DNA of 64,000 nucleotides. It comes from Botryllus schlosseri. Lineage: Eukaryota. The notes under the pieces are model-generated. The model did no database searches, was not told the origin of the DNA, and was given only the letters and a program-made list of their open reading frames with translations. The translations under genes were made by a program, and so were the position numbers. Positions within the stretch are counted from its first letter, which is position 1. Every line of letters begins with the position of its first letter. The stretch spans positions 1,736,001 through 1,800,000 of the forward strand of contig CM119374.1 in NCBI GenBank assembly GCA_051294905.1. The letters run 5' to 3'. Below, in pieces: positions 1,556 to 42,379 of this stretch.

Positions 1556-1765
1556 CTGTGATATGCGACGACGCTCCGTATATTCACAATGGAGTCGTTA
1601 CTCCTGGGTGCCCGGGAGGCAGTATTTCGGGTACTCTATGTGACATCGGATGCAATGAGGGATATTATGTTGGCGGCAATGCAAAAGCAATATGTGTTGA
1701 CTCTGATCCGGCAAACGGAAGCAATACCGATGGAGTATGGGACTACGGGTCTACTAACTGTGCAA
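1556..1765 (+). CDS. Gene 1 exon: Sushi/CCP domain (6-Cys type)
   Basis: ctcag acceptor, gtaagt donor, phase 1-1, 210 nt; VICDDAPYIHNG...CPGGSISGTLCDIGCNEGYYVGGNAKAICVDSDPANGSNTDGVWDYGSTNC. Confidence 0.92.
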
Positions 1766-22700: not shown

Positions 22701-25700
22701 GTGAATATTTTCTTTATAACATGAGGCGCGTGGATGATGTCAAGATAAATTTGAATATTTTGATATTGGACTAGTTGCAGACGAACTCCCTGACGAATGT
22801 CAGTCCGAAATATTCGGGCATATTGCAACATAAAAATATTATTCAATTCGATGTCGCATGGGTGATTCCATGTAACGTCGAAAATATTGCATCAATAACG
22901 TCAAATATTATAACTATAGTTGGGAATCGTTTTAGCCAAGATTAATCATTATACAATTATTATGATTTTTCAAGACGTAGATGAATGTGAAGCAGGCACG
23001 TTCTCGTGTCCCGATGGCGAAATCTGTCGCAACACGATCGGATCCTATTACTGCGAATGTATTGTTGGATACACATGGTCTGAAAGTGATGTTTGCATTC
23101 CAAGTGAGTACTGATCGCAACAGAACAAGTAGGCTATATTGGCTATCCACGTTACAAATAGTGAACAAACTAATCAAATGGAAAGTTTTTGTCTCGATGT
23201 TTGCGGTCAATATATGAATGTTATAAAAAGTTTGTTCGGCGTAACAAGTTATATTCGGAATATGCATCGTATGCCCGAATAATAATCGCACAGCCATGTA
23301 GTTAAAAAATACGAACGAATATAGACATATTTGCAAAATTATTGGAAAGGTGTCGGTATTTTCTTCATACGCGTAGTGAGCCATACGTCACACGTTGTCG
23401 CGGGTTATTTTTGTCCATTATCTGCTCCGTTCCCAAGAATGACCCTTAATTACACAAATGTACAGTTCTTCATAGCAGTGTCCATCGCTGAGCATACAGA
23501 TTCCACAATATGTGAATCCGAAAGGAAAAATCAACACTTAGCTGTGGTGCTAAATTTACCTCAGTCCTAATACTCCCCACTGCCAAACAATTCGTATATT
23601 CTAAGATCAAAGTGTATCAGCGCATTATGAATATACGGATTGCAGGCCGGCGCTGCAGCAGATTGAATTATATGCATCCCGATGCTTATCTTGTACCGAC
23701 TGCTCTGTCAATGTACACGCTAAAAAGGACTTTCATCTTCGTCAGTGATTTCGACATGCATTTGCAGTATCGACCGTACAGAATAATGATTGTCCCTTCC
23801 TTGATTATCAACTTTTGAACTCAGGTGATCATAGTCCTGACGATAAGAAACCTTTGAGTCAAGTGCAAATGAGCTCATTTAGTGTAGGATATTACTTTAC
23901 GCCGCACTCTGAGCCAGTTCACTTCAGTTCAATTGTCAAACACTAATATCGAAGCCGCCACTAACAAACAATAAACACAGAATGGAACAACATCGGTGTG
24001 TATAAAGACAGCATGTGCAACATGTTGTATGTTAAAGCTGTGATCAATTGCTTATTCGCAAGTGATGTGTGGCTAAACTGTTCTTTGTGACTTTGATTGA
24101 ATGCTAAATATGCTAATCGTGTAATTTAAATCTTTGATTACCGAATTAACGCAGCATTTGAACAATCCATTGCAGTTACATGTCCATCAGTTGTGATCCA
24201 GTGTAGCAGTTTGGATTTCCTATATGAACTTTGCGAAAGTGCAATGGACCAAGTCACAAACATCACATTCCCTCCAGCTTGGGCTGGATATTCAGTGACA
24301 TCAGAAACAACTTGTGGTGAAAGCACGACGAACGGTGAGATACGCGATTGTGAATTGTGGTCGAAACACTGAGGGGTGTTGATACCAGCGGGTCTGTGAC
24401 AGCAAACCAACGGCCAGCCACCGCTAGTGAATGGTTCTCGTGGGATCGCCATGTGTTAATTAGTGCAATCTTACAAAAGTCTGCAATATTTTACTTCACG
24501 TGTGTCGTGCCACTGCACCTGTGCTTCATAGAAGAACAAGATAACGAGATTGTCATTGTATATGGTCTATCAGTCAGGGCTGTAGATTCCGTCAATTTTA
24601 GTATCGACTCAGGCTAGGCTCCGACTCCTACTCCAAACATTTTTAATATGCCGACACAGAATCCGGAATCTTTAAACGTACCGACTCCCACTCCGGCTCC
24701 GACTACAATAGTATTACCAATTTCCTTAGAAAATTATATGCCCCAGTGACGGTTGAATGACTATCATATAACCATTATACATATAAAAATATATGATTAA
24801 CTGTGCCATGCAAAATAGTTTCATTGTGGCACTGCTCGAATTATTCACTATGCAATTAATATGAAAAATGCCTTTCTAAATATCCCTCCTTTTTCATATT
24901 TTATAAGTTTTTATAACATCGACTTTGCAATATTCTAACATCTATGAATCATTCAAACATGACATATATCGAAACCTGTATAATTAAACGAAGTTAAAAA
25001 ATCGAAGTCTAGCTCTTGTATATGAGTCGGAAACTAACTAGGAGATTTAACTTACTAATTGTATTCTTACACATTATACTGATTACAAGAACACACACTC
25101 TTACTACTAATATACATTGGTCTTTAAAATATGGGAAGTAGTCAAATAGCAGAACCTATCTCTAGTCTACATGCACTTAGTCAAGTATTCGAGCAATATG
25201 ACTTGCAGTCTTTTTTAATCATTTGTTCGACTCAGGCAGCTAAGCTACACAACAAATATGTTTAATTTTATCAAGTGGCAAGCATCGTTTGGTTATATTT
25301 CCATCAATGTTACAAAACCTGACGATGCATTTTCTCTGTCACAGGATCATGGAATAATTCCAAAAATTGCATCAATTTGTGATTGCATCGCGAATTTGCA
25401 TATTGCGATTTTCTTCCTTTATGCAACTGAATTGTAATTTCCGAATAATGCCCAATTTTATGTATATTTGTAGAGACCAACCTTTTCGGCCAAAGCAACA
25501 CATGAGATTTATCAACTATTGCGCGGGCAACTAGAATGTTGATAACTTTTTTAATATTCGTCCAATAGGAACGAATAAAATTAGGTATAATTGAAAACAA
25601 GACTTATGTACTACGCTTTAAAATTGATAACAATTACGTCATGCAAATGTGCTGTACGAGGCCATGTCAGGGTCGCGCAAAGCGCGACATTTTTTTAAAA

Positions 25701-28700
25701 GCTACTAATTATTGCTATCAATAAATATGTTACTTACATATATTGGGGATCGCATCTGTAAACCACTGGACTCATTTGGCAAGGACAGGATTATTCGGCG
25801 TTCATACATAGCAATATCCACGATTTCGGTACCTCTATCATTGTGTGCAGATGTTTCGTCGACGACGATCTCGCTGAGAGCGGGCGAGCGAAGACGAATG
25901 TTGGACGACACGTTATCTCCTGATTGCGACTATAGTTAGATTCAATTCGGTGAATAACGAGTATTTATGATTTTCAAGTGGACTCCAATACTGAATGCAA
26001 GAAATCTAGTGACAATAAATCACGCGAATGACGGGACGTGCCTGCAGCAGAACTTGCTGCTTTAGTCATCATCAAATTCCGCAGCCAGGCTAATCAAACT
26101 TTGGTTGACCTTGAAATTTTACCTGGTGTTCTAAATAATTTCGAGAATTACCTCGCAGGCCACACCGGTGTTGGGATCAAGTCACTACCTTTGAGTCACA
26201 AGTCATTTCGAGTCATTGCACATTTTGACTCGAGTCACGTCAAGTCAATCGAGAAATATATATATTTTGCTTTTCAATTACTTTAATACTATTTTACACG
26301 ACAACGTAAGCTGTAAGCTTCGATCACTTCGTTCGTGGTTAATTCAATTGCGAGAGACCAATCGAGGCACAATAAAACGCACGATCATTGAATGATTGGT
26401 TGCTCTCAAGGGTTATACCAGCGTTTCGCGCAAAATCCGAAAATATGCAAGATACAGTGATTTATATCGACACCGATTACTTAACGACTTGAAATTGACT
26501 CGTGACTATGAGAAAAATCCACATTTCTGATACACCGCGCCAAGTCAAGTCAAGTCATTTTTGCAAAGTGACTCGAGTCAGGTCAAGTCTTACAAAAAAG
26601 TTGAGTCAAGTCAATATAGCACTGGTCCACACAAAACCTTCCCGCGGGCGACGGATTGTACAACAAATTTGGCTCAATTTCAACAACTAGAAGCGAAGTA
26701 ATTGCCGTAGAAAAATTTCTAATTCCACGATTTTATAATAAATATAATTAAAGAGTTAGTCACCGTGAATACTAGTTTATTCAAATCCAAGTTTTTCTTC
26801 CGCAATAACTTCGCTTCGAGTTGTTGGAGTTGAGCCAAATTTATTGTACGTTGTCTCTACTGTCAGCCTAACAATTTTATGAAGTCGGCAGAAAAATTTT
26901 AAAATTTGTGTTTTTGTTTTTTATTTAATAAATTCAAAACTTTCTACTGCACTAATCTCGCTTCTGCGGGTTGGAATTGAGCCAAAGTTGGTGTGCAGCG
27001 TTTTATTAACCAACCTAACAATTTTATCAAGTAGCCAGTGAAATCTCAAGGAAAAGTTTTTTCTTTGAACAGCCCAAATGTACATTCAACTCTATATTTG
27101 GTGTTTGGTGGAACGTGAATAACCAATTAATCTCTAGCCTATTTCATACAGCTAGCAAAATGTGATGACTTTGAATCGTCATATATACTTCGAAAATTCA
27201 ATTGGACTCGAATTCTGACTTGACTCGTGACGAGACTTGACTTGACCCGAATCAAAATGTGCATTAACTCAAGAAGACTTGTGACTAGAAGGTAGTGACT
27301 TGATCGCAACACTGTCATAGAACGAGAGGAACATATACTACTACCATTGTGCACATCTCTTAACTCGCATGAATAACACGGATAAACATTTTTACGCCAT
27401 GTATATAATTTGGTATATTGAAATATATCAGTGGCAAATTCATACGATATTTCATTTCAGTCAACACACCTCTTGGCTCGAGGTTTTGTGAACTTGACGG
27501 CACGTGGTCAACAGTAACATGGCTTATGTCCTGTGGAACTGGACTTTCGGTAAGAACAGTGCTACTGTCAATATTTGTAAGAATTCAGGAGTAAAGCAGT
27601 GGTGATAAATAAATATTAGAACTTGGTGTAATACAGAAAGTGGATTAGTTGATAAAGTAGTTTCTGAATATTTCGATAACCGCGTTCAATATAAATTTAG
27701 ACTCGATAAGATGCGAGACAACGCAAGTCATGAGCCACAACATCCATGGCCATAGTCTGGAATTCGGGAAACGACGTATTTGTTCTACTTACTTATGCAG
27801 CCACGGTATCTTCAAAGTAAAATTGTGGTGCTCATCAGTAATTTGACTTCTGCTGGTTTTAATTCCCGTTCGACTACATCGGTTTCACGTCTGGAATAAC
27901 CCATTTTCCAATTATTATATTTTACAAGTAGAAAGCAGTTTGTGTAGTTAGGTTTTTGGTCACTTCTAACACAATCATATAAACCACTGAAAGACATAAT
28001 ACGTTTTACCACTTCTCTTATTGATATATGATGGTGCTTGCTGCAATTAAAAAGCTTGGTAATCTTTACAACCTGCAAACATGTGAACGTCTGAAAGTCC
28101 TGATTCTACTAAAATCTTTCGAAAATATTGGATTTTTCCATTGATGCAAACGTCCATGTAGTTACTTGTGGTTCCTTTTCACTAAAATCAGTAACTATAT
28201 AGTCACTACTTAAATAAATATCTATATAATAATCTGCCCTGTTCACGCGGTAGGAACAAAGGACCACAGTTATTTCGTGACTCCAAAATCATAGATAAAA
28301 TGGATCGACAGACATTCACATCACTGCCTAACGAATAATGTAGGTGTAAATAATCGAAATATAATTATTTTTCATAACATCGAACATTTATATATATTGG
28401 ATGAATTGATATGCAGGACGTTGCGGGTCAAACAATTGAAACCGAAGAGCAACGGCAACAGGTGTCTGCCAGTCTACAGATACTGACTGCTGATCCCGAA
28501 AAAGTCAAAAGTGATGATGTGGTTCTGACGTCAGTGGCCATTAATAGCGTCATCAGTTCAGCTGATATTATTACAGAAACTGTGAGTTTATCTATTTCAA
28601 CTTATGCTGAAGCGTATATAGCGGAACACTAATAACAGCAGCATGTTTTCTTTAGTAGCTGTCACATCATGATGGGATTATGCAATATTTTCTCGACGTA

Positions 28701-31700
28701 AAATAGCATACCTTTATAATTCTATGTTGATATTTCTAAACTGATGAATTGAATTACATGTGCTACTGTTGGAATTTCTAAGTTTATTACTATAAAGATG
28801 TGAAAGGCGTTTGCTAATTGCAATGTCTGGATTACAGAGAAACAAATCAATACGATCCCCTCTTTATGAGGCAATGGATCTTATTCGGAGTGACCTTGTT
28901 AGCATTGGCATGCCCCGAACAAAGAAAGTATATGAGTGATAATTGGAGTTAGGCATATGTCTATTAGAGCACTCGAATTCGAATTGAGTATCTATATTGA
29001 TGATTTGAGTATCTCACTGAGACATAATGTTTCGGTGAATACCAAAGTTATACAGTCTTTACTATTCTACGATCGACAAATGCCCAGACGTTATTTCTAC
29101 TGTGTGATCCGCGATACGATGTAACATTTCATTCAGTACGCGCAGCAGAATGCTTGCCATAGTCACGGCAATAATATTTCTGTAGGTTAGTGATCGACCT
29201 GCAGTTTTGTCATAAATCGCCATATCTCCCTGTCAGCAAGTTGTAAATAAATTATATAGATAAACGTAAGGGGCACTACTTATTGCTTGGTCGTACGGAG
29301 AATGCGTAATTGGATATTCCGGGTCACCCCACGGCGACATGATGAGTGCTATTCCAGTATTAGTTTGGACTTAAAGCTTCACACTCGCATTTGAATCGAA
29401 TATATCACGTAGTAGATTATGTCGAGTATTATTAATATTAGAAATCTTATCATTTACATCATCACGATTAAACCATTTCAGACGGCAACCTCTGTAATCT
29501 CGACTATAAGCAATCTGATGGAATCACCAGAATTGGGCAAAAGCGGCCAGTCGGCAGAGTAAGATATCTTGCGAGTAGAATTATGTAAGCTATCCCTATA
29601 ACGTAATAAATTTTAAAGGTTGCTTGCTCAGCTAGATCGCGTTGCATATCTTGTGGCGTTGAATGATAGCGGAGTATATAAAGCTGTGAGTAACAATGTA
29701 TCCATGCTAATAACGTCAGGTGAGTTACATAAATAGCTGAATGTCAAACTGTAATTTGCAGCTTCAAAGCCCGCATCTAATGTTAGATTGGGTATTACGG
29801 TCATTGTACATCATAAATCTTTGAAATACTTTTCGAAACTGCACTATACGCTTTCATGGACGTGACTTTTTTGACTTAGAAACCGTATTTTGATTCCATC
29901 TGGATTGCTTCGAAAAAGTTTGGAGATGACTCAAGGATACTCCTGAAAATTGTTAATCCAATTACAGTATTGGTCATGCGTAAAAGCAGACAAATCAATG
30001 TAATTATTGTATTGTTCCGTGATGAATGAATTGCAGTTACGCTATACTGCAGTAATTGTCACTGATCGCATACGAACAAGAGCAATCATTCAAGTTAGTT
30101 GTGTTGCAATGTATTTCGATACGGACCGATTCAACAAATTCTGTAGACGTTACTACTTTGTAACCCGGCCCGTATAGGCATATCGGACTGGTATATTAAC
30201 GAAAAGGAATGTTCCGAACCTCAATAGGCCACTTTTCGACACTTAACAGAAGTTTTCTCCGCTACCACAAGCATATTAATTCCGGTCATTATAGAAAATT
30301 ACAGAATAATTCAGCACTCTTAGTAAATATGATGCGAATTAAGTGAAAAATTGAGAATTTATCAAACAGCCATGTTATAAAATCAAAAGCCACAGGTTCG
30401 CGACGTATGCCAAGACGTCGGCGTTTCCTTTAACTTCTGCGACCCCAAAAACAGCACCACTTTTTATTTACCTGCAACCTTTTACCGGTACTTTATAGTA
30501 AGAGTTATTAACGTAAATATTACTATTATTGTTGTTGGGAAAATTCGCACACAACGGTCTTTGCTATGCCATAAATTCCATTTGCAATATGACAAAAAGT
30601 CCAAGGCAACTGTATTAAATTGAGGTATGAATAATACCTATTCCTACATGAAATGTTTCCATAGGTAAAGGACTGGAAGGAGGAATCGGCATGGCAGTTC
30701 TCGTAAGACCCAACTCAAATAAAATTGGATTCAGAAGTGACCAATTATTACTCACGGATTCACCAGAAGAAGCTGGCAGCGTTATCAATGGAGAGCGGAT
30801 AGAGGCATCTATTTATGTACCGGAAGTCGCATCACCAAATAGTAAAATGTTGCTTTAAAAATAAATACATAATGCGGTATATCTATTGCATATATTAGCA
30901 TAAAAAGACATAGATATCGTAACCTTTGGTGTAGCAGATGCATATTTTCTAAACACTACGAATTGGTGATATGTGCAATTCGGACTTGGTGTATCTTTAT
31001 TTCGCGTATTTCGTGTCGAAGATAGCATGAATATGTGAATTAACGAAAATTAAACCAAATCCAAACCTCGCTAAAGCACAGGAGAATTAGCGAAGACCAG
31101 CTATTTTAGTTTTTATGGACGATATGACAACGTTTCCTTGCTTTCAGAATCAAAAGTGACCTTCAATGTCATCAGAAACACGAATCTATTTCGAAAAAGC
31201 AACAGCGCGCAATCGCTACCGACTTCAGACGGCAGGAGAAAGCACAACGTGCCAACTGTGGTAATTTCAGCCACCGTCGAAAACCGAATCATATCAAATC
31301 TCCCAGCTGATCAACTTCTGACCTACTCGGTATGTTTTCGATAGTTTAATGCTGTAAAGCCGTGTTTCCTAATCTTTTTAATAGCTTAGACCTCTGTAAT
31401 TATTTGATGTGGTTGCGTAGACCCGCTGTTGAGAATATTTTGAATTGCAACTGCAAAGCTGCAGATGACCTAAAACTGTCACCAATTTCAATTGTAACCG
31501 GTTCTATGCCAAAATAGAGACATATGTTATTCATCGCAAAGTAGTTTTGTAGTAGTTTAAGTATGATTTGGGATGCACCCCTGTTCGGTGTATCTTCTGG
31601 GGTTCATTGACTCCTGTCCAGGTAACCACGTTGTGAATACTCGTGGATACAGTATAGTATCCTATCTCCGTACGACATAAAACCCTAAACCACGATGCTT

Positions 31701-34700
31701 ATGCATGAACAGAAAAAAAACGCCACTAATTGAACTGAACACATAATTCAACTATCCAACTACGTAATTCAAGTGCCTCTGGAATGGACACGGGACAATG
31801 TATCCATTCTATAATTATGTGCTGTATAGAGAGCGCACTCGAAATCAGTTAGTTAGATCAGAAATCTGGTAAATTTATTCCGACTAAAATGACTTCTCAA
31901 ACCAAGCTATGATAAGTTATCAATGACAATCCCGTTTTTGATGCCCGAAACAGTGTGATGACTATATAACCGCCAATTTAAATTCCCCGATTAGTGGCTA
32001 ATCGTTATCTGTCCAACCGGAACGGGTAGATTGCTGAAGTTTAAACTGCGATCACGGATTGATCCATATCCGTGAAACCCGGCCAATAGGTGTTAATTGC
32101 CATGCGACATCTTCTTCTTCATCAAAAGCCATTTTATATAAATCCACGGACGGATTGCACACCGAGTCTGCTTCCGTGACTGTATGAATGAACGATCCTC
32201 AGCATTACAATATCAGACTATCTCGCGGCGCCCCTCACCCCAACCCCCAAGCGTTGATCATAGCCAGGTCGGGATATTTTTTGGCATGTGCCAAAAATAA
32301 TAAGTCTTGCTTATTTTTGGCATTTTTCAGATTTTATTTTTGGCAGTTTTTGCATCTCCATGAATTCATATTTATAGACTTTAGTTCGGTCTTTCTTATG
32401 AAACGAAAGTCACAAAACATGCAGTATCCACACTGTGCCATCAAACAGCAAGACCTAAATCCTAATTGAAAACGATGTTGCAGACCAAATTTACGCGATA
32501 CAAAACTGAGTGCTTCTGCACTATATATTCTCAATAGTCGATTCACTATGCGTGCAAAATCCCGCCATTCACACATTTCGCAATGCTTATGATAACAATT
32601 CAAAAGGGTTTCTGACATGTTTGAATCTCAGCATTAGCTACCAAACCAATTGTTAGAAATCATGAGGGACTGTAATAACCAATATTTATAATATTAAAAA
32701 CTATTCACCCGGCAATGAAAAACTAGGAAAGGAGTCAATGTACTTATGTGTGTATGGTACGTATAGATATGGATGCCCGTTGCGCCATGTCTATTCATTG
32801 ATGAAACTATGCCCCTATTGGAAAACGTGACACAATCTACGAGTTATTGAACAATGGACATGCAGACAGTATTCAATTGCATGTTAAAGGGTAATGGAAT
32901 TTGGTATAATCCCGATTGAGCTAAATGCATCCTTGCTCGCGCCTGGTGGCCACATGATGTAACAAAATGTACGAGCAATGACAACAGGAAAATACGTAGT
33001 AATCGCGCTAAATTTTAAAAGTAGGGCCGCTATCACATATTCCGAAATACGTTGATTCCTACTTTGGCGTGCAGATATCATCTACATTCTTATCGCTTCA
33101 TATCATCTACCCCAGGGGCGGGCAACATACGGCCTAAACTAAACTCATAATAAAAATTCAGGAATCCGGCCAGCCTCATGTTCATGTTCCCCTATCCGGC
33201 TTGCCGGATGGAGAAGTTGCCCGCCCCTGATCCACCCCTTATTCGCAAGATATCATATTTTTCCTAATCGCTGGATTGATCAATCCACAGATTGGTCGCA
33301 TATCCAGATTTAACCACTGGACTTTTTAGCCTTCTCATTCACCTTTTATGGGTCCCTTGGATGGTAGTCTGCGGACCTCCATAGGATCTACGAACCCTAA
33401 TTCAGGAATTAGGCTTTACTTTACACATTTGTTTTGTCGCTTCATACAACTCCTTCCGATTCTTGTTGACATATTAATCAAATTATTTCATTTCTGGCAG
33501 TTTTAGCATTTGGTTCCCGAAATGCAAAAAAAAATAACACGGCCTGCTCATAGTTGAGCACCGTTGGTGTACTGTACACTTTGGATCTGACTGATAATTT
33601 TATCATCAATCCGTAGAACAACATGTATATGTCTAATGACATACGTGGTGCAATTTCTAATCCTCTTCTATATTTACACCAGCTGTCAACACAGTACGAC
33701 AATACGACGCAAGATCCGGCTTGCGTGTTTTAGAAGGAATCATCAAGAACTTGGAGCGATAAAGGATGTACAGTAACAGGAAGCAGTTCAGACTCGTTGA
33801 CCTGCTCGTGTGATCATTAAACAAACTTCACTGCATTATTGGTGAGAGGTGGCAAAAGCTTGCTGAATAACTACAACAGCATGGATAAAAATGAAGCTAA
33901 TGAGCCCAATGTATATTCAGTAGGCCCATCTATATGACCATATATATCTCTTTGAAATAGCCACCATATAAAATATCCATAGACTTTAGATTGCTTGTGT
34001 AGCCTACGGCCGCATTATGGTGCATATTAGTAATGAACTAACTTGACGTCAAATATCCATGTCAATATGTGCATTTCCGGTGAACCCCGGACCAATATAC
34101 TTTTTCATATCGGCATACTATGAGGTCATGTTATGAATGGTTACTGTGATTCGTTAAGATCGTTTTTTCGGATTTACGAATGAATTATTATTACTAATTT
34201 CACATATTACGATCACATATTTATCCTTTCTCCACCCACGTGAAAAAATTCACCGGTCGAGTGGATCGTAGGAGTGTATTCGCAAATTTAGATCAAGTTA
34301 TAAATGATGATGCATATATTTGAGTGGGTCGATTAACGCACCAGAAACAATTTGTCTCGCGAGGGGCGCACGATTCCAAGATGGTATTTTGATATGGGGC
34401 GGATCTTTTTCCTCTGCTATTCGCATACGTACAGTGGGGCTCGGATTGCAACTTGCGCTACTACACCAAGTCGAAAAAGGAGGCCGCAATGAATCGTGAA
34501 TGCCGCGGAGAATATTTCAAGATTAATTACGATCTCTTAAAAATTCGGGGTTCTATTATTAATTTCAATTTTCATGTGGGTGACCGCATGCGGCCGTACG
34601 CCCGTAGGTTGGCCACCCCTAGTCTATACACTATAACAAAACCAGTAGAATATCTTCAAATGATTTCGTGGCTCATTGGAAATGTCTCGCGGATCTAGTA

Positions 34701-37700
34701 GCGGGTCCGGCGCCCCCTATTTCATGGACTGTGGTAGAAAACAATGGGCAAGTGGTCGAAGTAGTCCGGTTTCGGGCTGTGACTTCGCTAATAAACCACT
34801 CGATTAATCAAATGTGTAATTGAATGTGCTATTTTTGGGACCAAATCCAGGTTGTTATAACAAAATTCGGGTAAGGCCTACGGGCTCATACGCTCATAGC
34901 ATTTGGTTCGAGATAGATGTACTGCACACATCCTGAATTCTCCTCTGCGATTGGCGGTACGGAGTTTAATTGTATTGGGTTTTGTTTTGTTGCTTTTTGT
35001 GACTACTAAATCAACTGAGAATATGGTGGAGATTTGCTCACATGAAATTTAGTACTGCACCAAGCTCTTTACTATTAACATGAATCAGTAATGACACTAA
35101 GCAGTAACATCTTTTATGATACGATTGAGAAATATTCTGACGATTTAACTTTGTAGCTCTCAAATACAAGTATATTTAGGTAATCATTTTGGCCGAAAAG
35201 CTTCAAAACATCTTTAATGTACAAAGGGCACCATTGTCCACAGTTGTACAGTAGCCTATACAGTGCCTTTTCGATTCGACACGCAGTGCGCTGCAGGATG
35301 CTAGTTAAAAAAAACTGTGGAAAATTCTCCGAGCTACTATCAGTATAAGTATCAGTTTAATAATATTTTTATCATTACAGAATGCAACAAAACTGCGATA
35401 AAATGAAAAGACAGGATGGCGTCGAAACGCTAGCGTGACGGGAGTGTTTTAACGGGCAATTGGCCATCTAAAAGTCCGCCTCAATCATTTTACATGAATT
35501 AAATTAGACCACTGCATTCATGGAAACTTAGTAGATTTGACAGATTTTGTCGAATGTTAGTTTGCGATGAGAACTCACGGATATATAGAACTATTGCTCC
35601 ACTCTAAATAATGATATATCCCTACTACACCATCTACTGCGATGGCATTTTTCTTCAGCGCCCCCTTATAACGCACCCTGATCCCAGCGCCCCCATTTCC
35701 TCCTGAGCGTTTCCGCCCTTTCCAAATCCAAATCGCCCTCTGGAGGGCGCTGGAGACAATGTTTAGAGCCGCTGATGTACAATGCAGGAACCACTGTCCT
35801 AATCAAACATATAAGTAGTGTTTTGTACTCAGGTGTGTACCTTGACACTTCAACTCTGAGTGAGTAAGGCAAAAAAACTGCTAACTACTGAGTAGAAGAA
35901 ACCTGTTTCACAAGCAGTGACTATAACGTGGATCCTAATTCGGGTCTTGCGGAGCAACGCACCGCAGAAGTTGGGTTTATCATCCTATGGGTCAAAAGAG
36001 CAACGTTTTGGTGTGGGCTGGCGAAGTGCAGTTACGGCCCTGGATATATAACGTCATTTGTTACACTTACATGTTAGTGTGATTGACAAAAGAACAACTA
36101 AATAAATTAGTCACTAACTACCTTGAAAACTCACGCGTAAGTGCAGTTTCTCAACCTATCTTTAGAACAGGCCCGCGGGCTACTTATCCGGTCCTCTCGG
36201 GCTACCTGGGTCCCGCGGGCACCGCGTTGGTGACCCCTGATTTAAAACCATTGATTCTTTCAACAGAAAATGAATAAATAATATATTTCGTGTCACGAGA
36301 CGATTTCATTGACTTATGCCTGGCGTGATAGTTCTCTACGATAGATGGGTTGAATCTGGGTTATTTGTTACAGAGACCGCATAAGGATATTTCTCAGTCG
36401 TCAGGACTACATATCGTCACAATCGTGGGGTGCTCGATATCAATGTTTGCATTATTGCTTCTGATGTTGTTCTTTTTGTGCGTGCCGTAAGTACCCGATT
36501 GCTGCTATGTTTTATCAATTCGCCATTAGGTAAGGAAACTCGCGCAAACTGTAACGATTTTGCGATCGTTAGGCATGTCGGAAATTTGCAAAGTTTTGAA
36601 TATTAGCCACGCTAGCCTCTCCCTCTTTACAGTTTATAGAATTTTATATTAACCTTATATTAACCTATGCGTTTTGTTTCAATCGTGCAATTTATTTAAA
36701 GGAGTTTTGATCAAGTTTACATATAATAGATCTTATGCACATCTAAATGAACCAAAATTCTAGAATCATTTTGTTTAAATCTTCGCACGGCGGTGCTTAT
36801 TATACACCGGGGCTTGAAAGGCTCCAAGAAACGATCCATTCAGCATACGTCTGCGAAGAAATTAAACCGAGGTTCTGGTTCTCAACATGCCAAGTCATTC
36901 CGAGTTGAACGCATTAAATGCATTTCATTTCAAATAAAATTACATGCAGTTTTCTCGAACCATTTCCGAATTTATTTGATGCATGAAATGTCTTTATCGA
37001 ATGTATAGGTGAATAGTTCATTCGATTCGGCTGCAAACGCCTATAGATCACATTGTGTTAAGTAGACGAAACACTTACAACCATCACATTAAGTTTTGTT
37101 AGTGTGTTAATCACGGACGGATAAGCTCGTGGGCTACATTTGTTTCCTAATTTCATGGCCTACTTATTTGCTAATCATTCCATGTTAATAATTCTATATA
37201 CATTAGGAGTAAGGTTGAGGTTTACTTTAATTTGCTGGAACCCTAACAAAATCATATAACCTCGAGGTTTTACTCGATACCAAAGATGGAAAGCCAATTT
37301 ACTAACATTTAATGTCTATCAGCATCGTTTTGCTGAGCGATAAAGTTTATATTATTATTCAGAAATACTCGTACTGGGAGAAAGTTTCAAGGCGCATTTT
37401 TGTTACTCAATCTGTCACTCGCTCTTCTCTTGCACAACACCACGTTGCTCGTCAGCGAAATGCCATTCATAATATTTGCTGATGACTATCACGTCATTTC
37501 ATATTCATGTCGGACGATAGCAGTCATTTTGCATTTTTGTCTGCTTGCCTCTTGCGCGTGGATGAATTGCGAGGCAGTGATGCTATTTTTAGCCGTGGTT
37601 AAGGTAAGTGATATTGCTGGGTGTTATATCCAGTACGATATGGTATTGTAATTGTAATTTCTTTATCAGAATTATTATTATTGCGATATACTAATTACTA

Positions 37701-40700
37701 GCCACGTAGTCTTTCAATACGCGAATTAACCAGGTAAAGTGGTGACATATTAACGATACTGGACCCAAGTATGGCACTGTGTACCTTGATCCCAAAGCTA
37801 CATAATTATATTTTGTTTCGATGTAAATATAAACGACACGCGATCTTTTAGTACAATAACTAAATCTGCAGCAAATTAATGGTTGTTCCATGATCCGTTG
37901 AGTCGCTTATCCAAGTTCGTGATATTTTTCAATCAAATATCAAATTTCACAGACACCCAGCAGTAGACAACCTTGTTCTGCAACACATGTTTGCCAAAAA
38001 TCGCCTCCATCAACGAAATCAGAAGTGGCGGCATCTCCTATATAATTAAAATCCCATAAAGAATTACGAAATGCCTACAACAAGAAGAATTAAATATTTT
38101 TTATCACCGTCTACATCCAGCCAATGTACACGCGAACAAGTCTAAAAGATGCGCAAGTGATTCTGGCGTCAGTATCTTGGGGATGGATTATGCCAGCCAT
38201 ATTCGTTGGCATCGTTGCTCTCGTCGATAACAACGTTTACGAATATCCCTACGAACATGGTTTTATTGTTACGTGAGTGTTACATGCGTAAAGGAATGTT
38301 GAACGCATATTTATTAAATATTTTCTGACATACAGATGTTGGATTGATCCTGAATATATCTTGTACCTTGCCGTTATTCCTACTGTCGTAATGATCACTA
38401 TCAATATGATTGTCTACGGCATCTTAACGTACCAATTATGCCTGAAGCGAAGCGCTGTTTCGGTGAGTGGACCACTATATATCCTACCTACCTACGACTT
38501 CCATATCATATCGCTGCTCCGCCTTAGTTAAAATAAAATCATGGAATAATCTTACCTTAGATCGGTTTGGTGTAGAATGTGGAAACTGGACACTAATCCC
38601 TTTTATCTGATACGATTTTGGTTTCAGACATAAAACTACAACTGCAATATTCAAATTTTCCACAGACGGCAGCGTATAAGCATGCATACCTGGTGAAAGT
38701 TAGAAACACAATCTTCTCTATAGCTACTTGAAATCATACTCTGTTGTGGACCACGCACCAGTTCAAACGTGACGTAGCTGCGTTGCTTGCTAGCTTTCAT
38801 ATCTATCCAAATACTCGGTTTGCGGCATTTGCTGCGAGTTATCCGCTCGTGAACTAGATTTTGTAATCTCAAAAAGCAATCATCACCTTTATATTGAAAT
38901 TTATCGATAAAATGAATGAAACAAGGTTATTATGTGTGTATCGTTCCTTTCCGATGACCACTATTTGCAGAGATATCGAAATAAATCGATTCAACAATGA
39001 GTTAGAAAAAGGACGACGAACTTTGAGATCGACTCCTGATGTAAATGTACAATTACCGATCATGCTAAGCAAAACATTGTTAACAGACTGTATCGAAATA
39101 TAAACCATTTCAACAGGGAAAATCACGGATAAACTCAAAAGAATCTTACCAAAGAAAACTTGGCATTAATTTCAACATTTTCGTGATGTTGGGATTAACA
39201 TGGATATTCGGCTTTTTCCTACCCGGAGTCGAAGACGAAAGTGCAGCACTCGTCTTTGCTTACATATTCGCCATTCTGAACTCATTGCAAGGTATTGGAA
39301 TATCTGACTTCCATGCCTAATGATGATATATCTATAATCGTCGCATTCTCTTGTGAGTAGGCTAGATGCAGAAGTTTTCCATAAAGTGTACAGATGGCAT
39401 AGCAAGCAATATGAGACGTAACTCTTTTACCAAAGTGAAAAACAGACCATTCGCGAAATATTGGCAGCAGATTTAGCTGCTCAGCAGTGTTGGGGTCAAG
39501 TCACCACCTTCGAGTCACGAGTCACTTCGTGTCATTACACATTTTGACTCGAGTCAAGTCAAGTCAAGTCAATCGATTTTCGAAGGTGACTCGAGTAAAG
39601 TGAAGTCACTCAATTTTTGGAGGTGACTCGAGTCAAGTCACAATTCAATTCAAGTTGCCTTTCTGAAGTATGTGACATTATTACGTCATTGCATTTTGCC
39701 TGCTGTCTGAAATCCTGATTTACTGGTCATTGATTCTGACCCGATGAAATAATATAGAGCTAAATATACACGCAAGAAGGCGCTGTATCGCTCACATACA
39801 CGTGGAACTGTTAAACTACGTAATAAATTGCATAGCCTCAGTTTATGGTTACCACTTAACCATCCAAAATAGAGAATAGAGAAGCGAATTAATAAGATTC
39901 CATACATTTCCCATTTACAAATTGATATGATACAATTCCAGCATGAAGAAATGATTGAGGACTATATAGAGTATATTCGAATTCGATTTCAATAAAACAG
40001 TAGGTTTATTTGAGGTAAGAAAATAGGGAGCAGAAATATACATTTTTCTATTTTATTACTTTACTACTAGTTTACGAAAACGTATCTGTAAGCTTCGATC
40101 ACTTCGTTCGGGTTCAAAGTATTTGTTAGAGAACAATGGAGGCCCAGTCAAATGCACGATCTCTGAATGAATGTTTTCTCTTACTGGTTACACCGGTGTT
40201 TCGCGAACAATCCGAACATATGCAAGATTCAGTGATTTCTATCGTCACCGATTACTTGATGACTTGAAATTGACTCGTGAATTTGTACTAATCAATCCCC
40301 ATTTCTGATGCGTCGAGTCAAGTCAAGTCAAGTCATACGAAAAAGATGACTCGAGTCATACCAACACTGCTGCTCAGTATATACCATCGTATTTTCCCGA
40401 TGATATAGAAGTAAACGCAATTTTACAATCGAAAGATATAGTAATATAAAGATGGCGTCTTCCATTCATGGCCCCAGTATCGATTCTTAATTCCTATATA
40501 TAGATCATGCCTGTTTGGCTTTGACCAACTAACCCAGCAATAAGCAAACTTCGGCCCACGGATAGGACGAGGTCCATGAAATCCGCAAGTAACTATATTA
40601 TGAATATCAATAATATTGCGTGAAAATGTGCCGATACCTGATCCAAACTTTCCTAATATATTTCATCATCTTCAGTAGAAACAAGTTTTAATAGGGCTGG

Positions 40701-42379
40701 CCTAAATTAAAGTTTTAAGTTTATTTTTGGATCAATTACCCGACTAAGGACATGGCATGCGGCCTATTTGGTGCGACTCCTATACAAACAATCCTGACTC
40801 ATCACTTCCGATGCGTAAATACGGCCATAATCACTCTAACAGCTTCAAAGTCAAAACGTAATGCATGGGATTATGTATGAGCACCTTGCTCAACACATAA
40901 CTCCGACCTTATTACACCGTCTATATGGGTGGATACATATAATTGCACCTTTTTGCGTGTGCCATCCGGTCCTCTTTCGTTCAACATCCGTCCAGCCACT
41001 GTGGACGTAACCTGTGAGTATGAACAGCTGTATAATGGCGTAGGATGTGTCATGCATCAATATTAATCAGCGCTGCATTTAACTGTCTCTGTTGCCAATC
41101 AGATCGTATCAGCAGTGACATATGCTGTCATAGCCATATCTGAATTATAGAAAGTAGACTAGGGGTCAGCAACTGAAACTCGAATAATACTTTATTGAGG
41201 TATAACTATTTTCCGAATGATGATCTAAGCATTCTATTCAAACCAACGGTAGAATTCAGATAACTGGCAAGATACATGTGAGTATGAGTATAGGTCACAA
41301 TGCACAAATTCGATATCTAATTTAGAAGATCGGATCGTACACCGCAAGGTGGTTGGTTGCGTTATGAATTCAGATCGACATCCTCGACGTTGTTATCATC
41401 ACTATTTCTGTTTTGCAACCACTGAAATGGTGCATCGTATCAACGTGAGACCCGACTGGCAACTAATAGCTCTTCGATGTCACCCTCGTCATCGTTGCTT
41501 TGCTGCATTTGAAGAGTGAAACTGCTTATAAAATTAATAAGCAAGCTCTTGGATAAAGCACTGAATTGTTTATTCAAAATTGTATGATGCTTTCAGTGTT
41601 TTCCTCTACTTTAGAAATCAGCTCATGCTACTTTCATCTTCAATTCTAACAAATTGCGAGCAAAATCTGCATATTAGCAATCCCTATTCGTCCAATGCGC
41701 GTGGATATTTTTTTTTATACATTTCAATGATATAAAGTAACAGTAAAGAGATGTTCCTGTTCAGGTCTTGAGCGCCACCACCATGCGTGTTTTATGTTGA
41801 AAGATTATTGTGCTTGTAAGCTTCCTTGCCACATTCTCTTTCTTGCGTTACCACACGCTGCGTTCAATTCCTCGTTCACCCGTATAACTTCGGGTCGTCT
41901 CTGTTGCCGACATTGTTTGAGCTCGGTTCACTATTTGCCTGAGCTTTTTTAATAACTAGGCATGCAGCGGGAGAACTCATGTAGATCGCGGATAAACCTT
42001 CTATGCGTAGAAATTTGATCGATACGATGGTCGTACCAGATCCCGTTGGTGCCGATGTTCAATGGAACGGTTTAAGCCATTACTTCTTACCTTCATTCCA
42101 TTTTCGAAGACGAGAGAAGCTGGACATAGCCTATGGAGACAGCTTAAAAACTGATTTAATTCACTTTACAAATGACTTTATTTATTTGTATTGGTGCAGT
42201 AGTGTACATTTACCGCGTCACTCAATGATATTAAAACGATTGAATTATGTGTGACATTTATTTACAGGATTTTTCCTACTACTTCTGTACGTATTGAGAA
42301 ATAATGATGCCCGGCAAACTATCCAAAAAGAAATTTTGTCAATTTACGAAAAATTGATAAATATATCTAGTCAAAGCGG
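1556..42379 (+). CDS. Adhesion GPCR gene 1 (5' end outside window), 20 exons: Sushi-Sushi-EGF-cbEGF-EGF-cbEGF-HRM-GAIN/GPS-7TM; GPS exon carries two in-frame stops
   Basis: Manual splicing: all exons have AG/GT boundaries and intron phases chain consistently. Translation gives CCP, EGF, HRM (RFCELDGTW), GAIN, GPS (C-x-F-*...W...GC...C-x-C-x-H-*-T-N-F) and secretin-like 7TM motifs (IVGCSIS, LNLSLA, WMNCEA, GW-x-x-P, CWI, LGLTWIFG, NSLQGFF). The terminal exon is not resolved. Confidence 0.93.
1848..3830 (-). mobile_element. Decayed non-LTR retrotransposon 3' fragment (RNase H-bearing, I-clade-like LINE), interrupted by a hAT element
   Basis: RNase H motifs DCLSAI...WIPGH...GNEKADELA (ORF 3205-3732). 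On the other side of the hAT it continues as RR...FRLQIGH..LQAHLFKFG...C...HYLLTC..Y (degenerate CCHC) with stops. Ends in a (CAA/TAA)-rich tail near 1848-1875. Clade assignment from motif memory. Confidence 0.85.
2306..3365 (+). mobile_element. Non-autonomous hAT (Buster/Charlie) deletion derivative with transposase C-terminal remnant
   Basis: TIRs caggggtcaccaacc / ggttggtgacccctg; TSD ccttatat / ccatatat. About 2960-3202 reads YGSTYRCESAFS..NFIKNKHKTRL...HLEHSLRIAVS*..P....Q.SH* (hAT dimerisation domain). Confidence 0.9.
4540..7838 (+). pseudogene. Possible decayed multi-exon gene nested in the Sushi1-Sushi2 intron
   Basis: Exon-like blocks with canonical splice sites (4540-4689, 5171-5305, 5853-5976, 6538-6604, 6667-6885, 7688-7838), most with 1-3 in-frame stops; family not recognised. 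Confidence 0.4.
6975..7544. mobile_element. MITE with GACTCGAGTC/AAGTC subterminal repeat arrays
   Basis: Many copies of the palindrome gactcgagtc, ending in cagcacaaccctg; left end decayed. Confidence 0.65.
8303..9565. mobile_element. hAT MITE
   Basis: TIRs caggggttgtcaac / gttgagaacccctg; perfect 8-bp TSD gtctaatc; homologous inverted copy at 53273. Confidence 0.92.
10439..10522 (+). repeat. Perfect 42-bp tandem duplication
   Basis: gcatatgtgcctgttaattgggttgtgaatatgcattttgat x2. Confidence 0.95.
11486..11698 (+). CDS. Gene 1 exon: second Sushi/CCP domain
   Basis: tatag acceptor, gtaaga donor, phase 1-1, 213 nt; VKCRSVPRLQNG...CQITCNDGYTVSGIARATCVDLNVADDTNTDGEWYYGNTAC. Confidence 0.92.
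14715..16325 (+). mobile_element. hAT-Buster deletion derivative
   Basis: TIRs cagtggttctcaacc / ggttgagaaccactg; perfect TSD ctctaggc; remnant ELKTMPMSNDTICRRICDMS near 16020-16090, resembling the Buster/ZBED5 P-L-S-N-x-T-x-x-R-R-I motif. Confidence 0.9.
16334..16492 (-). mobile_element. tRNA-derived SINE
   Basis: Minus strand has a Pol III A box TAGCGCAGTGG and B box GGTTCGAGTTC at tRNA-like spacing, an imperfect cloverleaf, and an unrelated GC-rich body. Confidence 0.55.
16835..17646. mobile_element. hAT MITE
   Basis: Starts cagggacgggcaacctgcggcc; right TIR decayed; perfect 8-bp TSD tattagat. Confidence 0.75.
18061..20760 (-). mobile_element. Decayed CMC/Chapaev3-like DNA transposon, split by a hAT MITE
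   Basis: Minus-strand remnants: YSPVSIGHSTKIKEQY (about 20340-20400), LSNEKLASGIFDRFQIR, NMAIKVYFLFSHLD, ERRFHQDI...RY*GRW...MADHCWNL (18640-19080). Superfamily call from motif recall; ends approximate. Confidence 0.7.
19090..20332. mobile_element. hAT MITE with AAGTA/TACTT subterminal repeats
   Basis: TIRs cagaggtggtca / tgaccacctctg; TSD aaaatttt / caaatttt; interrupts the Chapaev3-like frame. Confidence 0.88.
20860..20958 (+). CDS. Gene 1 exon: EGF-like domain
   Basis: gacag acceptor, gtaagt donor, phase 1-1; CPTCTNNSECLDFRCQCKGGYEGINGEESNCV. Confidence 0.85.
21122..21250 (+). CDS. Gene 1 exon: calcium-binding EGF domain
   Basis: DIDECLDNKTCASTRQLCENVPGTYQCTCNEGYVPSENGEDCI; phase 1-1; followed by a 63-bp intron. 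Confidence 0.92.
   Translation: MLTNAWTTRLALRQDNYVKTYLGLINAPAMKATCHPKTEKIA
21314..21427 (+). CDS. Gene 1 exon: EGF-like domain
   Basis: NLCESSDCGANAACYVDSTNDCSCFVGFVGDPGVACF; tttag acceptor, gtgatt donor, phase 1-1. Confidence 0.9.
22975..23103 (+). CDS. Gene 1 exon: calcium-binding EGF domain
   Basis: DVDECEAGTFSCPDGEICRNTIGSYYCECIVGYTWSESDVCIP; caag acceptor, gtgagt donor, phase 1-1. Confidence 0.93.
24155..24334 (+). CDS. Gene 1 exon: N-terminal half of HRM-like domain
   Basis: FEQSIAVTCPSVVIQCSSLDFLYELCESAMDQVTNITFPPAWAGYSVTSETTCGESTTN; gcag acceptor, gtgaga donor, phase 1-1. Confidence 0.82.
24608..25550. mobile_element. Diverged copy of the CCGACTCC-repeat MITE (family of 46290-47442)
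   Basis: Collinear similarity by eye to 46340-47200 (ccgactcc repeats; gtattaccaatt..aaaattatatgcc; ctacatgcacttagtcaagtattc; tttgttcgac.caggcagct). Confidence 0.8.
26166..26624. mobile_element. hAT MITE, GACTCGAGTC family
   Basis: cggtgttgggatcaagtc ... tagcactg; TSD ggccacac / gtccacac; internal sequence matches 40070-40369. Confidence 0.85.
27165..27315 (-). mobile_element. Partial inverted copy of the GACTCGAGTC-family MITE
   Basis: Reverse complement of the family left end (cagtgttgcgatcaagtcactacc...). Confidence 0.7.
27461..27549 (+). CDS. Gene 1 exon: C-terminal half of HRM-like domain
   Basis: VNTPLGSRFCELDGTWSTVTWLMSCGTGLS (R-x-C-x-x-x-G-x-W...C); tttcag acceptor, gtaaga donor, phase 1-0. 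Confidence 0.87.
28417..28581 (+). CDS. Gene 1 exon: GAIN subdomain A start
   Basis: DVAGQTIETEEQRQQVSASLQILTADPEKVKSDDVVLTSVAINSVISSADIITET; gtgagt donor, phase 0-0. Confidence 0.87.
29482..29558 (+). CDS. Gene 1 exon: GAIN subdomain A
   Basis: TATSVISTISNLMESPELGKSGQSA; tttcag acceptor, gtaaga donor, phase 0-2. Confidence 0.82.
29619..29719 (+). CDS. Gene 1 exon: GAIN domain
   Basis: ELLAQLDRVAYLVALNDSGVYKAVSNNVSMLITS; after a 60-bp intron; gtgagt donor, phase 2-1. Confidence 0.82.
30665..30841 (+). CDS. Gene 1 exon: GAIN domain
   Basis: GKGLEGGIGMAVLVRPNSNKIGFRSDQLLLTDSPEEAGSVINGERIEASIYVPEVASPN; phase 1-1. Confidence 0.8.
31148..31329 (+). CDS. Gene 1 exon: GAIN subdomain B
   Basis: SKVTFNVIRNTNLFRKSNSAQSLPTSDGRRKHNVPTVVISATVENRIISNLPADQLLTYS; tttcag acceptor, gtatgt donor, phase 1-0. 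Confidence 0.87.
33683..33841 (+). pseudogene. Gene 1 GPS-motif exon with two nonsense codons (TAG 33731-33733, TAA 33818-33820)
   Basis: LSTQYDNTTQDPACVF*KESSRTWSDKGCTVTGSSSDSLTCSCDH*TNFTALL; intact ccag acceptor and gtgaga donor; phase 0-0, 159 nt. Confidence 0.92.
36374..36486 (+). CDS. Gene 1 exon: TM1
   Basis: RPHKDISQSSGLHIVTIVGCSISMFALLLLMLFFLCVP; tacag acceptor, gtaagt donor, phase 0-2. Confidence 0.9.
37363..37603 (+). CDS. Gene 1 exon: ICL1, TM2, TM3
   Basis: NTRTGRKFQGAFLLLNLSLALLL...SYSCRTIAVILHFCLLASCAWMNCEAVMLFLAVVK; gtaagt donor, phase 2-0. Confidence 0.93.
38121..38272 (+). CDS. Gene 1 exon: TM4
   Basis: PMYTRTSLKDAQVILASVSWGWIMPAIFVGIVALVDNNVYEYPYEHGFIVT; gtgagt donor, phase 0-2. 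Confidence 0.9.
38336..38462 (+). CDS. Gene 1 exon: ECL2 and TM5
   Basis: CWIDPEYILYLAVIPTVVMITINMIVYGILTYQLCLKRSAVS; after a 63-bp intron; phase 2-0. Confidence 0.9.
39117..39291 (+). CDS. Gene 1 exon: ICL3, TM6, start of TM7
   Basis: GKSRINSKESYQRKLGINFNIFVMLGLTWIFGFFLPGVEDESAALVFAYIFAILNSLQG; phase 0-1. Confidence 0.93.
39485..40369. mobile_element. hAT MITE, GACTCGAGTC family
   Basis: TIRs cagtgttgg / ccaacactg; perfect TSD ctgctcag; aagtc and gactcgagtc arrays at both ends. Confidence 0.93.
42268..42379 (+). CDS. Gene 1 exon: end of TM7 and helix 8
   Basis: GFFLLLLYVLRNNDARQTIQKEILSIYEKLINISSQSG; tacag acceptor, gtgaga donor, phase 1-2. Confidence 0.87.

What the first reader, a model, noticed from the sequence alone, without database searches (positions are those of the whole stretch)
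33683..33841. Adhesion GPCR with its autoproteolysis (GPS) exon selectively knocked out: two stops at the two key residues of a frame-neutral exon
Seen: the GPS exon reads PACVF*...WSDKGC...CSCDH*TNF. TAG (33731) replaces the Trp of C-x-F-W and TAA (33818) replaces the Leu of the H-L/T cleavage site; each is one substitution from TGG or TTA. The other 19 exons (~2.8 kb, including the whole 7TM with the TM3/ECL2 cysteines) contain no stop or frameshift. The exon is phase 0-0 and 159 nt, so skipping it fuses GAIN (..LTYS) in frame to TM1 (RPHKDIS..). Established: the GPS supplies both the cleavage site and the tethered Stachel agonist. Inference: two hits confined to one skippable exon fit relaxed selection on that exon alone better than whole-gene decay. 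Options: (a) a constitutively skipped exon giving a non-cleavable, Stachel-less receptor; (b) a poison exon, or a switch to a secreted Sushi-EGF-HRM-GAIN ectodomain decoy; (c) A-to-I recoding (UAG to UIG would restore exactly the Trp); (d) a recent null allele or assembly error.
Basis: partly seen in the sequence, partly recalled or inferred. Interest (0 to 1): 0.78.

Follow-up and report, generated by a model that had tools for sequence, protein, structure and literature searches.

The report
Two stop codons in GPS exon

Summary
Exon 33683-33841 (159 nt, phase 0-0, canonical AG/GT) encodes a GPS motif (Pfam PF01825). It carries TAG at 33731 and TAA at 33818, at the Trp of C-x-F-W and the Leu of H-L|T, residues invariant in five tunicate relatives.

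The gene is a tunicate ADGRG7-like adhesion GPCR. Its 17 other core exons are open, and their phases match the Styela clava relative, mostly with the same lengths.

- The 0-0 phase is ancestral; Styela has it too.
- The exon's splice sites are of average strength, and no alternative GPS exon exists.
- Every other GPS hallmark survives (four Cys, second Trp, His, Thr, Phe), so the stops are young.
- The exon holds 9% of the gene's one-step nonsense targets. Two stops land in a single exon 6% of the time by chance.
- No dsRNA supports editing.

The protein has evolved no faster than its Styela counterpart (56 versus 53 unique changes), so this is not an old pseudogene.

Best explanation: a recent null allele or young pseudogene in a tandem paralog array (about 0.55).

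The parts
1556..1765 (+). Sushi-like exon, phase 1-1, probable N-terminal part of the same gene
   Evidence: Open in frame with canonical AG/GTAAGT. The Cys/Trp pattern is Sushi-like by eye. Pfam was not significant.
11486..11698 (+). Sushi exon, phase 1-1
   Evidence: Pfam Sushi PF00084, 28.4 bits. Open in frame with canonical splice sites.
17961..18041 (+). Candidate Cys-rich exon, phase 1-1 (uncertain)
   Evidence: Open Cys-rich frame with a phase-compatible AG and GT. No homology support.
20860..20958 (+). EGF exon a
   Evidence: tblastn to Styela P0002; gene model.
21122..21250 (+). EGF-CA exon b, with an unusually weak donor (GTTAAC)
   Evidence: tblastn. Donor score is -1.1 against 3.8-11.8 for the other exons.
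21314..21427 (+). EGF exon c
   Evidence: Gene model.
22975..23103 (+). EGF-CA exon d
   Evidence: tblastn, 49% identity to Styela; gene model.
24176..24334 (+). HRM-like exon 1
   Evidence: tblastn; gene model.
27461..27549 (+). HRM-like exon 2, 89 nt as in Styela
28417..28581 (+). GAIN subdomain A exon
   Evidence: Weak Pfam GPR128_GAIN_subdomA hit, E 0.002; tblastn.
29482..29558 (+). GAIN exon 2, 77 nt as in Styela
29619..29719 (+). GAIN exon 3
30665..30841 (+). GAIN exon 4, 177 nt as in Styela
31148..31329 (+). GAIN exon 5, ends ..LTYS at phase 0
33683..33841 (+). GPS exon (last strands of the GAIN domain, cleavage site and tethered-agonist peptide), 159 nt, phase 0-0, two in-frame stops
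33731..33733 (+). TAG at the position of the invariant Trp of C-x-[FY]-W
33818..33820 (+). TAA at the position of the invariant Leu of the H-L|T cleavage site
36374..36486 (+). Linker and TM1 exon, 113 nt as in Styela
37363..37603 (+). TM2-TM3 exon
   Evidence: Pfam 7tm_2, 34.7 bits. 63% identical to Styela.
38121..38272 (+). TM4 exon, 152 nt as in Styela
38336..38462 (+). TM5 exon, 127 nt as in Styela
39117..39291 (+). TM6-TM7 exon
   Evidence: Pfam 7tm_2, 21 bits.
42268..42379 (+). End of TM7 and start of the C-tail
43198..43330 (+). Candidate last coding exon (Ser/Thr-rich tail ending TYQV, then a stop); uncertain
   Evidence: Phase-compatible acceptor and open frame. No homology support.

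Best explanation
This is a member of the tunicate ADGRG7-like adhesion GPCR family (Sushi / Cys-rich / EGF / HRM-like / GAIN-GPS / 7TM). It sits in a tandem array of paralogs and has very recently acquired two nonsense substitutions in its GPS exon. If the exon is spliced in, which its ordinary splice signals predict, translation stops at 33731, far upstream of the last exon junction. The transcript would then be a target for nonsense-mediated decay, and no seven-helix receptor would be made. In that case this copy is a null allele, either still segregating or a newly fixed young pseudogene. Shown: the stops, the gene's identity, the conserved exon structure, the lack of rate acceleration, and the intact splice signals. 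Inferred: that the exon is included, that the transcript decays, and that the copy has no function.
For: - The stops are real in the sequence and fall on family-invariant residues.
- All other GPS hallmarks are retained: four Cys, the second Trp, His, Thr and Phe of the tethered peptide.
- The exon's splice sites score in the middle of the gene's range: donor 7.8, acceptor 4.0 with 14 of 18 pyrimidines. So the exon was under selection until recently, and nothing predicts that it is skipped.
- Exon phases match the Styela relative throughout, and six exons match in exact length (89, 77, 177, 113, 152, 127 nt).
- Relative-rate test with Clavelina as outgroup: 56 window-unique against 53 Styela-unique changes. 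There has been no long decay, so the lesions are young.
- The GPS exon is the richest nonsense target in the gene (9% of one-step paths), and two stops share one exon 6% of the time by chance.
- No replacement GPS exon exists in the window.
- None of five annotated Styela isoforms lacks the exon.
- The family is large and lineage-specific in ascidians: 24 of 30 Ciona adhesion GPCRs are unclassified (PMC2396169).
- A second run of Sushi exons begins about 14 kb downstream. Redundancy of this kind makes loss of one copy tolerable.
Against: - Both disabling lesions lie in the one exon whose removal keeps the frame, and there is no frameshift or stop in the other 2.3 kb. A model with constraint lost on this exon alone predicts that pattern with probability 1, against 0.06-0.09 under whole-gene neutrality.
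- Three further changes hit otherwise invariant residues of the tethered peptide (TNFATLF to TNFTALL). This hints, without significance, at some relaxation there.
- Expression, exon inclusion and decay are all untested.
Confidence: 0.55

Rival explanations
1. Exon-specific death with productive skipping. The GPS exon is no longer used. Splicing joins 31329 to 36374 in frame and yields a receptor that cannot self-cleave, has no tethered agonist, and has lost the last strands of its GAIN domain. The rest of the gene stays under selection.
For: - Both lesions lie in the single phase 0-0 exon, and the other 17 core exons are open.
- There is no rate acceleration outside the exon: 49 against 50 unique changes.
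- In the exon itself the count is 7 window-unique against 3 Styela-unique changes, including three in the tethered peptide.
- Alternative splicing of the GPS-coding part is reported for most mouse adhesion GPCRs, at low abundance (PMC6667449).
Against: - The 0-0 phase is ancestral, not a sign of adaptation.
- The splice sites are not weakened, and a long-unused exon should have lost them.
- The motif cysteines, Trp, His and Thr are all intact, so any relaxation is very recent.
- The excess of changed invariant sites is not significant (p = 0.12, or 0.40 without the stops).
- In the GAIN model of the Styela relative the exon covers the last four to five beta strands. The model's confidence is modest. 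From general knowledge of GAIN structures, losing these strands would probably misfold subdomain B.
- No Styela isoform skips the exon.
Confidence: 0.15
2. The stop-bearing exon acts as a poison exon, or as a switch to a secreted product. Inclusion either down-regulates the gene through mRNA decay or yields a soluble Sushi-EGF-HRM-partial-GAIN ectodomain ending at ..PACVF, which acts as a decoy.
For: - The stop at 33731 would leave the whole ectodomain up to the GPS open.
- Soluble N-termini produced by premature stops are described for human adhesion GPCR transcripts (PMC11039983).
Against: - A transcript with a stop six or more exon junctions upstream of its end is a classic decay target.
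- The truncated GAIN domain would lack its last strands.
- The intact 7TM exons would then be useless, yet they show no decay. That fits recency as well as it fits this model.
- There is no alternative terminal exon and no evidence for a polyadenylation site.
Confidence: 0.07
3. Sequencing or assembly error, or a collapsed paralog. The animal's true sequence has TGG and TTA.
For: Not excluded, because no reads could be examined. The genome holds many paralogs (scan notes).
Against: - These are two independent substitutions (not homopolymer indels) 87 nt apart, in unique sequence with no repeat.
- The surrounding exon and introns show no anomaly.
- No paralogous GPS exon is present in the window to be confused with it.
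Confidence: 0.04
4. A-to-I RNA editing recodes the stops (UAG to UIG, read as Trp).
For: UAG to UGG would restore the expected Trp exactly.
Against: - UAA can only become a sense codon by double editing, and that gives Trp, not the invariant Leu.
- No inverted repeat or stable duplex covers either site. The longest arm touching the exon is 19 nt at 74% complementarity, and the local fold has z = -1.4.
Confidence: 0.01

Closest known systems
Styela clava adhesion G-protein coupled receptor G7-like (XP_077976443.1 = P0142; locus L001)
   Same: It is the best full-length hit in a library of 1.8 billion representative proteins. It shares EGF, HRM-like, GAIN-GPS and 7TM regions. Intron positions and phases match, and six exons have identical lengths. 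Its GPS exon is likewise a separate phase 0-0 exon.
   Different: The Styela exon is open, with Trp and Leu at the two positions, and is present in all five annotated isoforms. Styela has a Thr-rich mucin-like N-terminus where the window has Sushi exons. Overall identity is only about 45%. One-to-one orthology is not shown: a test for shared neighbouring genes found nothing.
Low-abundance splice variants of mammalian adhesion GPCRs that lack the GPS-coding part (Knierim et al. 2019, PMC6667449)
   Same: The GPS and the 7TM lie on separate exons, so the GPS can be spliced out. Such variants were seen for most mouse adhesion GPCRs.
   Different: Those are minor isoforms of genes whose GPS exon is intact. 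Here the exon is genetically dead, so a skipped form would be the only receptor-coding product. No transcript evidence exists for the window gene.
Lineage-specific adhesion GPCR pseudogenes such as human ADGRE4P (EMR4) (from my own knowledge, not checked here)
   Same: A member of an expanded adhesion GPCR family is inactivated by a small lesion in the ectodomain-coding part, while the rest of the gene still looks intact.
   Different: As I recall, the human case is a frameshift, and its fixation and expression have been studied. Here there are two nonsense substitutions, and fixation and expression are unknown.
Naturally non-cleaved adhesion GPCRs with a degenerate GPS consensus (from my own knowledge, not checked here)
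   Same: They are receptors of this class that work without self-cleavage, which is what the skipping model needs.
   Different: They keep a complete, folded GAIN domain and usually the tethered peptide. The skipping model here removes the last strands altogether.

Membership tests
Adhesion GPCR (class B2) | Secretin-type seven-helix domain (Pfam 7tm_2) | tested here: met
   Colinear 7tm_2 matches were found on exons TM1 to TM6-7. Two exceed the cutoff: 34.7 and 21.0 bits against 20.6. TM7 continues in exon 42268.
Adhesion GPCR (class B2) | GPS motif directly before TM1 | tested here: met
   PF01825 scored 27.8 bits against a cutoff of 22.5 on the 28 residues between the stops. The four-Cys pattern is shared with Styela.
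Adhesion GPCR (class B2) | GAIN fold upstream of the GPS | tested here: inconclusive
   The AlphaFold model was built on the Styela relative's GAIN region, aligned with window exons. It has pLDDT 58.5 and pTM 0.62. Its top 12 PDB matches are all GAIN domains; the best is 6v55 at E 6e-9. The window protein itself was not modelled because its spliced sequence has no reference.
Self-cleaving adhesion GPCR | Open reading frame through the GPS with the H-L|T triad | tested here: not met
   His and Thr are present. The Leu codon is TAA, and an upstream Trp codon is TAG.
Old (long-decayed) pseudogene | Lesions spread over the gene and faster protein evolution | tested here: not met
   There are no other stops or frame breaks in 17 core exons. 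Unique changes number 56 against 53 for Styela. One weak donor (GTTAAC at 21251) is the only other oddity.
Young pseudogene or null allele | Disabling mutation in an exon that is spliced in, with the transcript lost or reduced | not testable with these tools
   The disabling mutations are shown.
Cassette (skipped) exon | Symmetric phase so that skipping keeps the frame | tested here: met
   The exon is 159 nt and phase 0-0. The same is true of the intact Styela exon (165 nt), so this feature does not discriminate.
Cassette (skipped) exon | Weak splice sites, or annotated isoforms without the exon | tested here: not met
   Donor and acceptor scores lie within the gene's range. All five Styela isoforms contain the exon.
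Cassette (skipped) exon | Skip junction seen in RNA | not testable with these tools
No protein from this species was found in the protein collections.
ADAR recoding site | Edited adenosine lies within a stable RNA duplex | tested here: not met
   No arm of 20 nt or more at 80% or higher complementarity overlaps the exon, and the local fold has z = -1.4.

The most novel reading that the evidence does not exclude
The stops mark the genetic death of the GPS exon alone. The gene's working product would be an exon-skipped receptor that lacks the cleavage site, the tethered agonist and the last GAIN strands. That would be a natural experiment showing that an adhesion GPCR can be kept by selection without its defining activation module.
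Probability: 0.15. Interest if true: 0.65.

Novelty: new member of a known kind. Interest (0 to 1): 0.27.

Why it matters
If this is a young null copy, it is an ordinary example of gene birth and death in a lineage-specific receptor family, useful mainly for correct annotation. If the skipped form proved to be the expressed and conserved product, it would bear on an open question for this receptor class: how far signalling depends on GAIN-mediated cleavage and the tethered agonist.

Tried and rejected
- **Same-species sequences in the protein collections:** none were found. The TM2-3 exon's best hits are 66% and 64% identical. A profile of the GPS exon pieces, sized to catch both intact and broken genomic ORFs, found no candidate.
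- **Two exact-pattern scans of metagenome contigs across the exon:** both were empty.
- **Alternative or duplicated GPS exon in the window:** none by tblastn or by motif search.
- **Shared neighbouring genes with Styela:** tblastx of the Styela flanks against the window found nothing. The lectin-like ORFs at 50.6-51.6 kb gave no Pfam hit. I therefore dropped the synteny argument and do not claim one-to-one orthology.
- **dN/dS against Styela:** not attempted. At about 45% protein identity, synonymous sites are saturated, so I used a protein relative-rate test instead.
- **Modelling the exon-skipped protein:** not done.
- **Known RNA families:** the Rfam scan of the window was empty.

Full report
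**What is there.** The stretch 33683-33841 is bounded by a canonical acceptor (...tatatttacaccag|CTG) and donor (TTG|gtgaga). It translates in frame to LSTQYDNTTQDPACVF*KESSRTWSDKGCTVTGSSSDSLTCSCDH*TNFTALL, with TAG at 33731-33733 and TAA at 33818-33820. The 28 residues between the stops hit the Pfam GPS model above its curated cutoff (27.8 against 22.5 bits). The exons downstream give colinear 7tm_2 matches. The neighbouring exons end at 31329 (...LTYS, phase 0) and begin at 36374 (RPHKDIS..., phase 0).

**What gene it is.** I searched the TM2-3 exon (80 aa) against 1.84 billion representative proteins. The best hits were an unnamed 125-aa genomic fragment (66%) and a 1,226-aa protein (64%), followed by Clavelina and Ciona proteins. 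The sources name the long hit "adhesion G-protein coupled receptor G7-like" of the ascidian Styela clava. So the window comes from a sea squirt. Notes from this scan on the same genome say the same.

I fetched the Styela locus (L001) and derived its exons from its own protein. Using those as a guide, I rebuilt 18 core exons in the window, from the first EGF exon at 20860 to the exon that finishes TM7 at 42379.
- All 18 have AG/GT borders.
- All intron phases match Styela.
- Six exons have exactly the Styela length (89, 77, 177, 113, 152, 127 nt).
- The 2,501-nt reading frame contains only the two stops of the GPS exon.
- Two Sushi exons upstream (1556-1765 and 11486-11698) are also open and phase-compatible.

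An AlphaFold model of the Styela GAIN region, aligned with window exons, reached modest confidence (pLDDT 58.5, pTM 0.62). It matches only GAIN domains at the top of the PDB search; the best is zebrafish Gpr126, E 6e-9. The exon corresponds to the last four or five strands of that model.

**How special is the pattern?** Four tests bear on this.

1. *Exon phase.* The Styela GPS exon is also a separate phase 0-0 exon (165 nt). The "frame-neutral" property is therefore inherited and says nothing about adaptation.

2. *Conservation at and around the stops.* In an alignment with Styela and four Clavelina relatives, both stops fall on invariant residues: the Trp of C-x-[FY]-W and the Leu of H-L-T. 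Every other hallmark survives in the window: all four cysteines, the second Trp, the His, and the Thr and Phe of the tethered peptide. An exon that had been free of selection for long would not look like this. Its splice sites also score in the middle of the gene's range. The stops are therefore recent.

3. *Rate tests.*
   - Family-invariant positions are changed in the window at 5 of 13 sites in this exon, against 27 of 136 elsewhere (Fisher p = 0.12; without the stops, p = 0.40).
   - Three of the changes lie in the tethered peptide (TNFATLF to TNFTALL). This is suggestive but not significant, and it was noticed post hoc.
   - With Clavelina as outgroup, the window lineage has 56 unique changes and Styela has 53. 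Outside the GPS exon the counts are 49 and 50. The gene as a whole has not been drifting, which rules out an old pseudogene. The resolution is coarse, because the two species are only about 45% identical.

4. *Clustering of the stops.* The GPS exon is the richest nonsense target among the 18 exons, with 34 of 377 one-step paths (9%). Two random nonsense hits fall in one and the same exon with probability 0.06. That is mildly unusual, not compelling, and the case was picked out precisely because it looked odd.

**Alternatives examined.**
- *Replacement exon.* There is no second GPS-like exon anywhere in the window. Mutually exclusive exon usage is excluded.
- *Skipping in the relative.* None of the five annotated Styela isoforms lacks the exon.
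- *RNA editing.* No inverted repeat or stable local fold covers either stop. UAA could in any case only be edited to a Trp codon, not Leu.
- *Assembly error.* This would need two independent substitutions 87 nt apart in unique sequence. I rate it unlikely but could not check it.

**What could not be done.** The decisive junction counts and raw-read checks were therefore impossible. I looked for sequence of the same species by other routes and found none:
- The TM2-3 open frame finds only the 61-66% fragment.
- A GPS-exon profile sized to catch either intact or broken genomic ORFs finds no candidate.
- Two DNA pattern scans of metagenome contigs were empty.

**Most likely mechanism.** The gene belongs to a large, lineage-specific and tandemly arrayed family.
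- In Ciona, 24 of 30 adhesion GPCRs are unclassified, lineage-specific paralogs (PMC2396169).
- In this window a further set of Sushi exons starts at about 56.7 kb.
- Scan notes describe a tandem array of lectin/Sushi/EGF paralogs here (a lead, only partly checked).

In such families single copies are lost often. The splice signals predict that the exon is included. Translation would then end at 33731, many junctions before the 3' end, so the mRNA should be degraded and no receptor made. I therefore read this as a recent null allele or very young pseudogene (0.55). From my own knowledge, ascidians have very high heterozygosity, so a segregating null haplotype is plausible.

It explains why both lesions sit in the one removable exon. 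Splicing-out of the GPS part is known at low abundance in mouse adhesion GPCRs (PMC6667449). Against it stand the intact splice sites, the intact motif residues and the expected damage to the GAIN fold. A poison-exon or secreted-decoy role (0.07), assembly error (0.04) and editing (0.01) follow.

**Novelty and verdict.** The interpretation that the exon was selectively inactivated is possible but not supported beyond a post hoc clustering of about 1 in 11 to 1 in 16. On present evidence this is a new, broken member of a known receptor family. It is of modest interest unless RNA data show that the skipped form is the expressed product.

Noticed in passing
window 21248-21256: The donor of EGF exon b is GTTAAC, preceded by TTA. 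It is by far the weakest splice site in the gene: -1.1 against 3.8-11.8 for the others. It could be a second lesion, or a sign that this phase 1-1 EGF exon is alternatively used, as in EGF-TM7 receptors.
   Followed up: partly
window 50587-51636, 54599-54988, 56745-57044, 58045-58179: Downstream of the gene lie lectin-like open frames (by eye only; no Pfam hit), a 130-aa open frame with no match, and two Sushi-type exons. The one at 56745-57044 hits Pfam Sushi and is about half identical to the exon at 11486-11698. Together they look like the N-terminal part of the next paralog in a tandem array.
   Followed up: partly
window 59433-59783 (wider 58.6-60.5 kb): A reverse-transcriptase fragment (Pfam RVT_1, E 3e-10) lies on the + strand, next to an A-rich stretch (AT skew 0.28 at 58-60 kb). 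It is probably a non-LTR retrotransposon inside an intron of the downstream gene.
   Followed up: partly
window 25219-25434 and 46981-47190; 26195-26698 and 39439-40446: Two pairs of similar open frames sit in introns and after the gene (for example ...KWQASFGYISINVTKPDDAFSLSQDHGIIPKIASI... against ...KWEAACGYIYINFTKPYDIFTLSQYHGIILKIASI...). They are interspersed repeats of unknown type.
   Followed up: no
window 31330-33682 and 33842-36373 versus L001 34752-34819 and 34985-35628: The introns flanking the GPS exon are 2.35 and 2.53 kb here, against 68 and 644 nt in Styela clava. The whole core gene spans about 21.5 kb here (20860-42379), against about 14.8 kb for the corresponding Styela exons (L001 24620-39418).
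   Followed up: no
window 33113-33126 / 33216-33229: A perfect 14-nt GC-rich inverted repeat (CAGGGGCGGGCAAC / GTTGCCCGCCCCTG), with arms 89 nt apart, lies in the intron upstream of the GPS exon. It may be a small hairpin element.
   Followed up: no
window 43198-43330: This is a candidate last coding exon with a Ser/Thr-rich tail ending in TYQV, which could be a PDZ-type C-terminal ligand. It is not conserved with the Styela tail.
   Followed up: no
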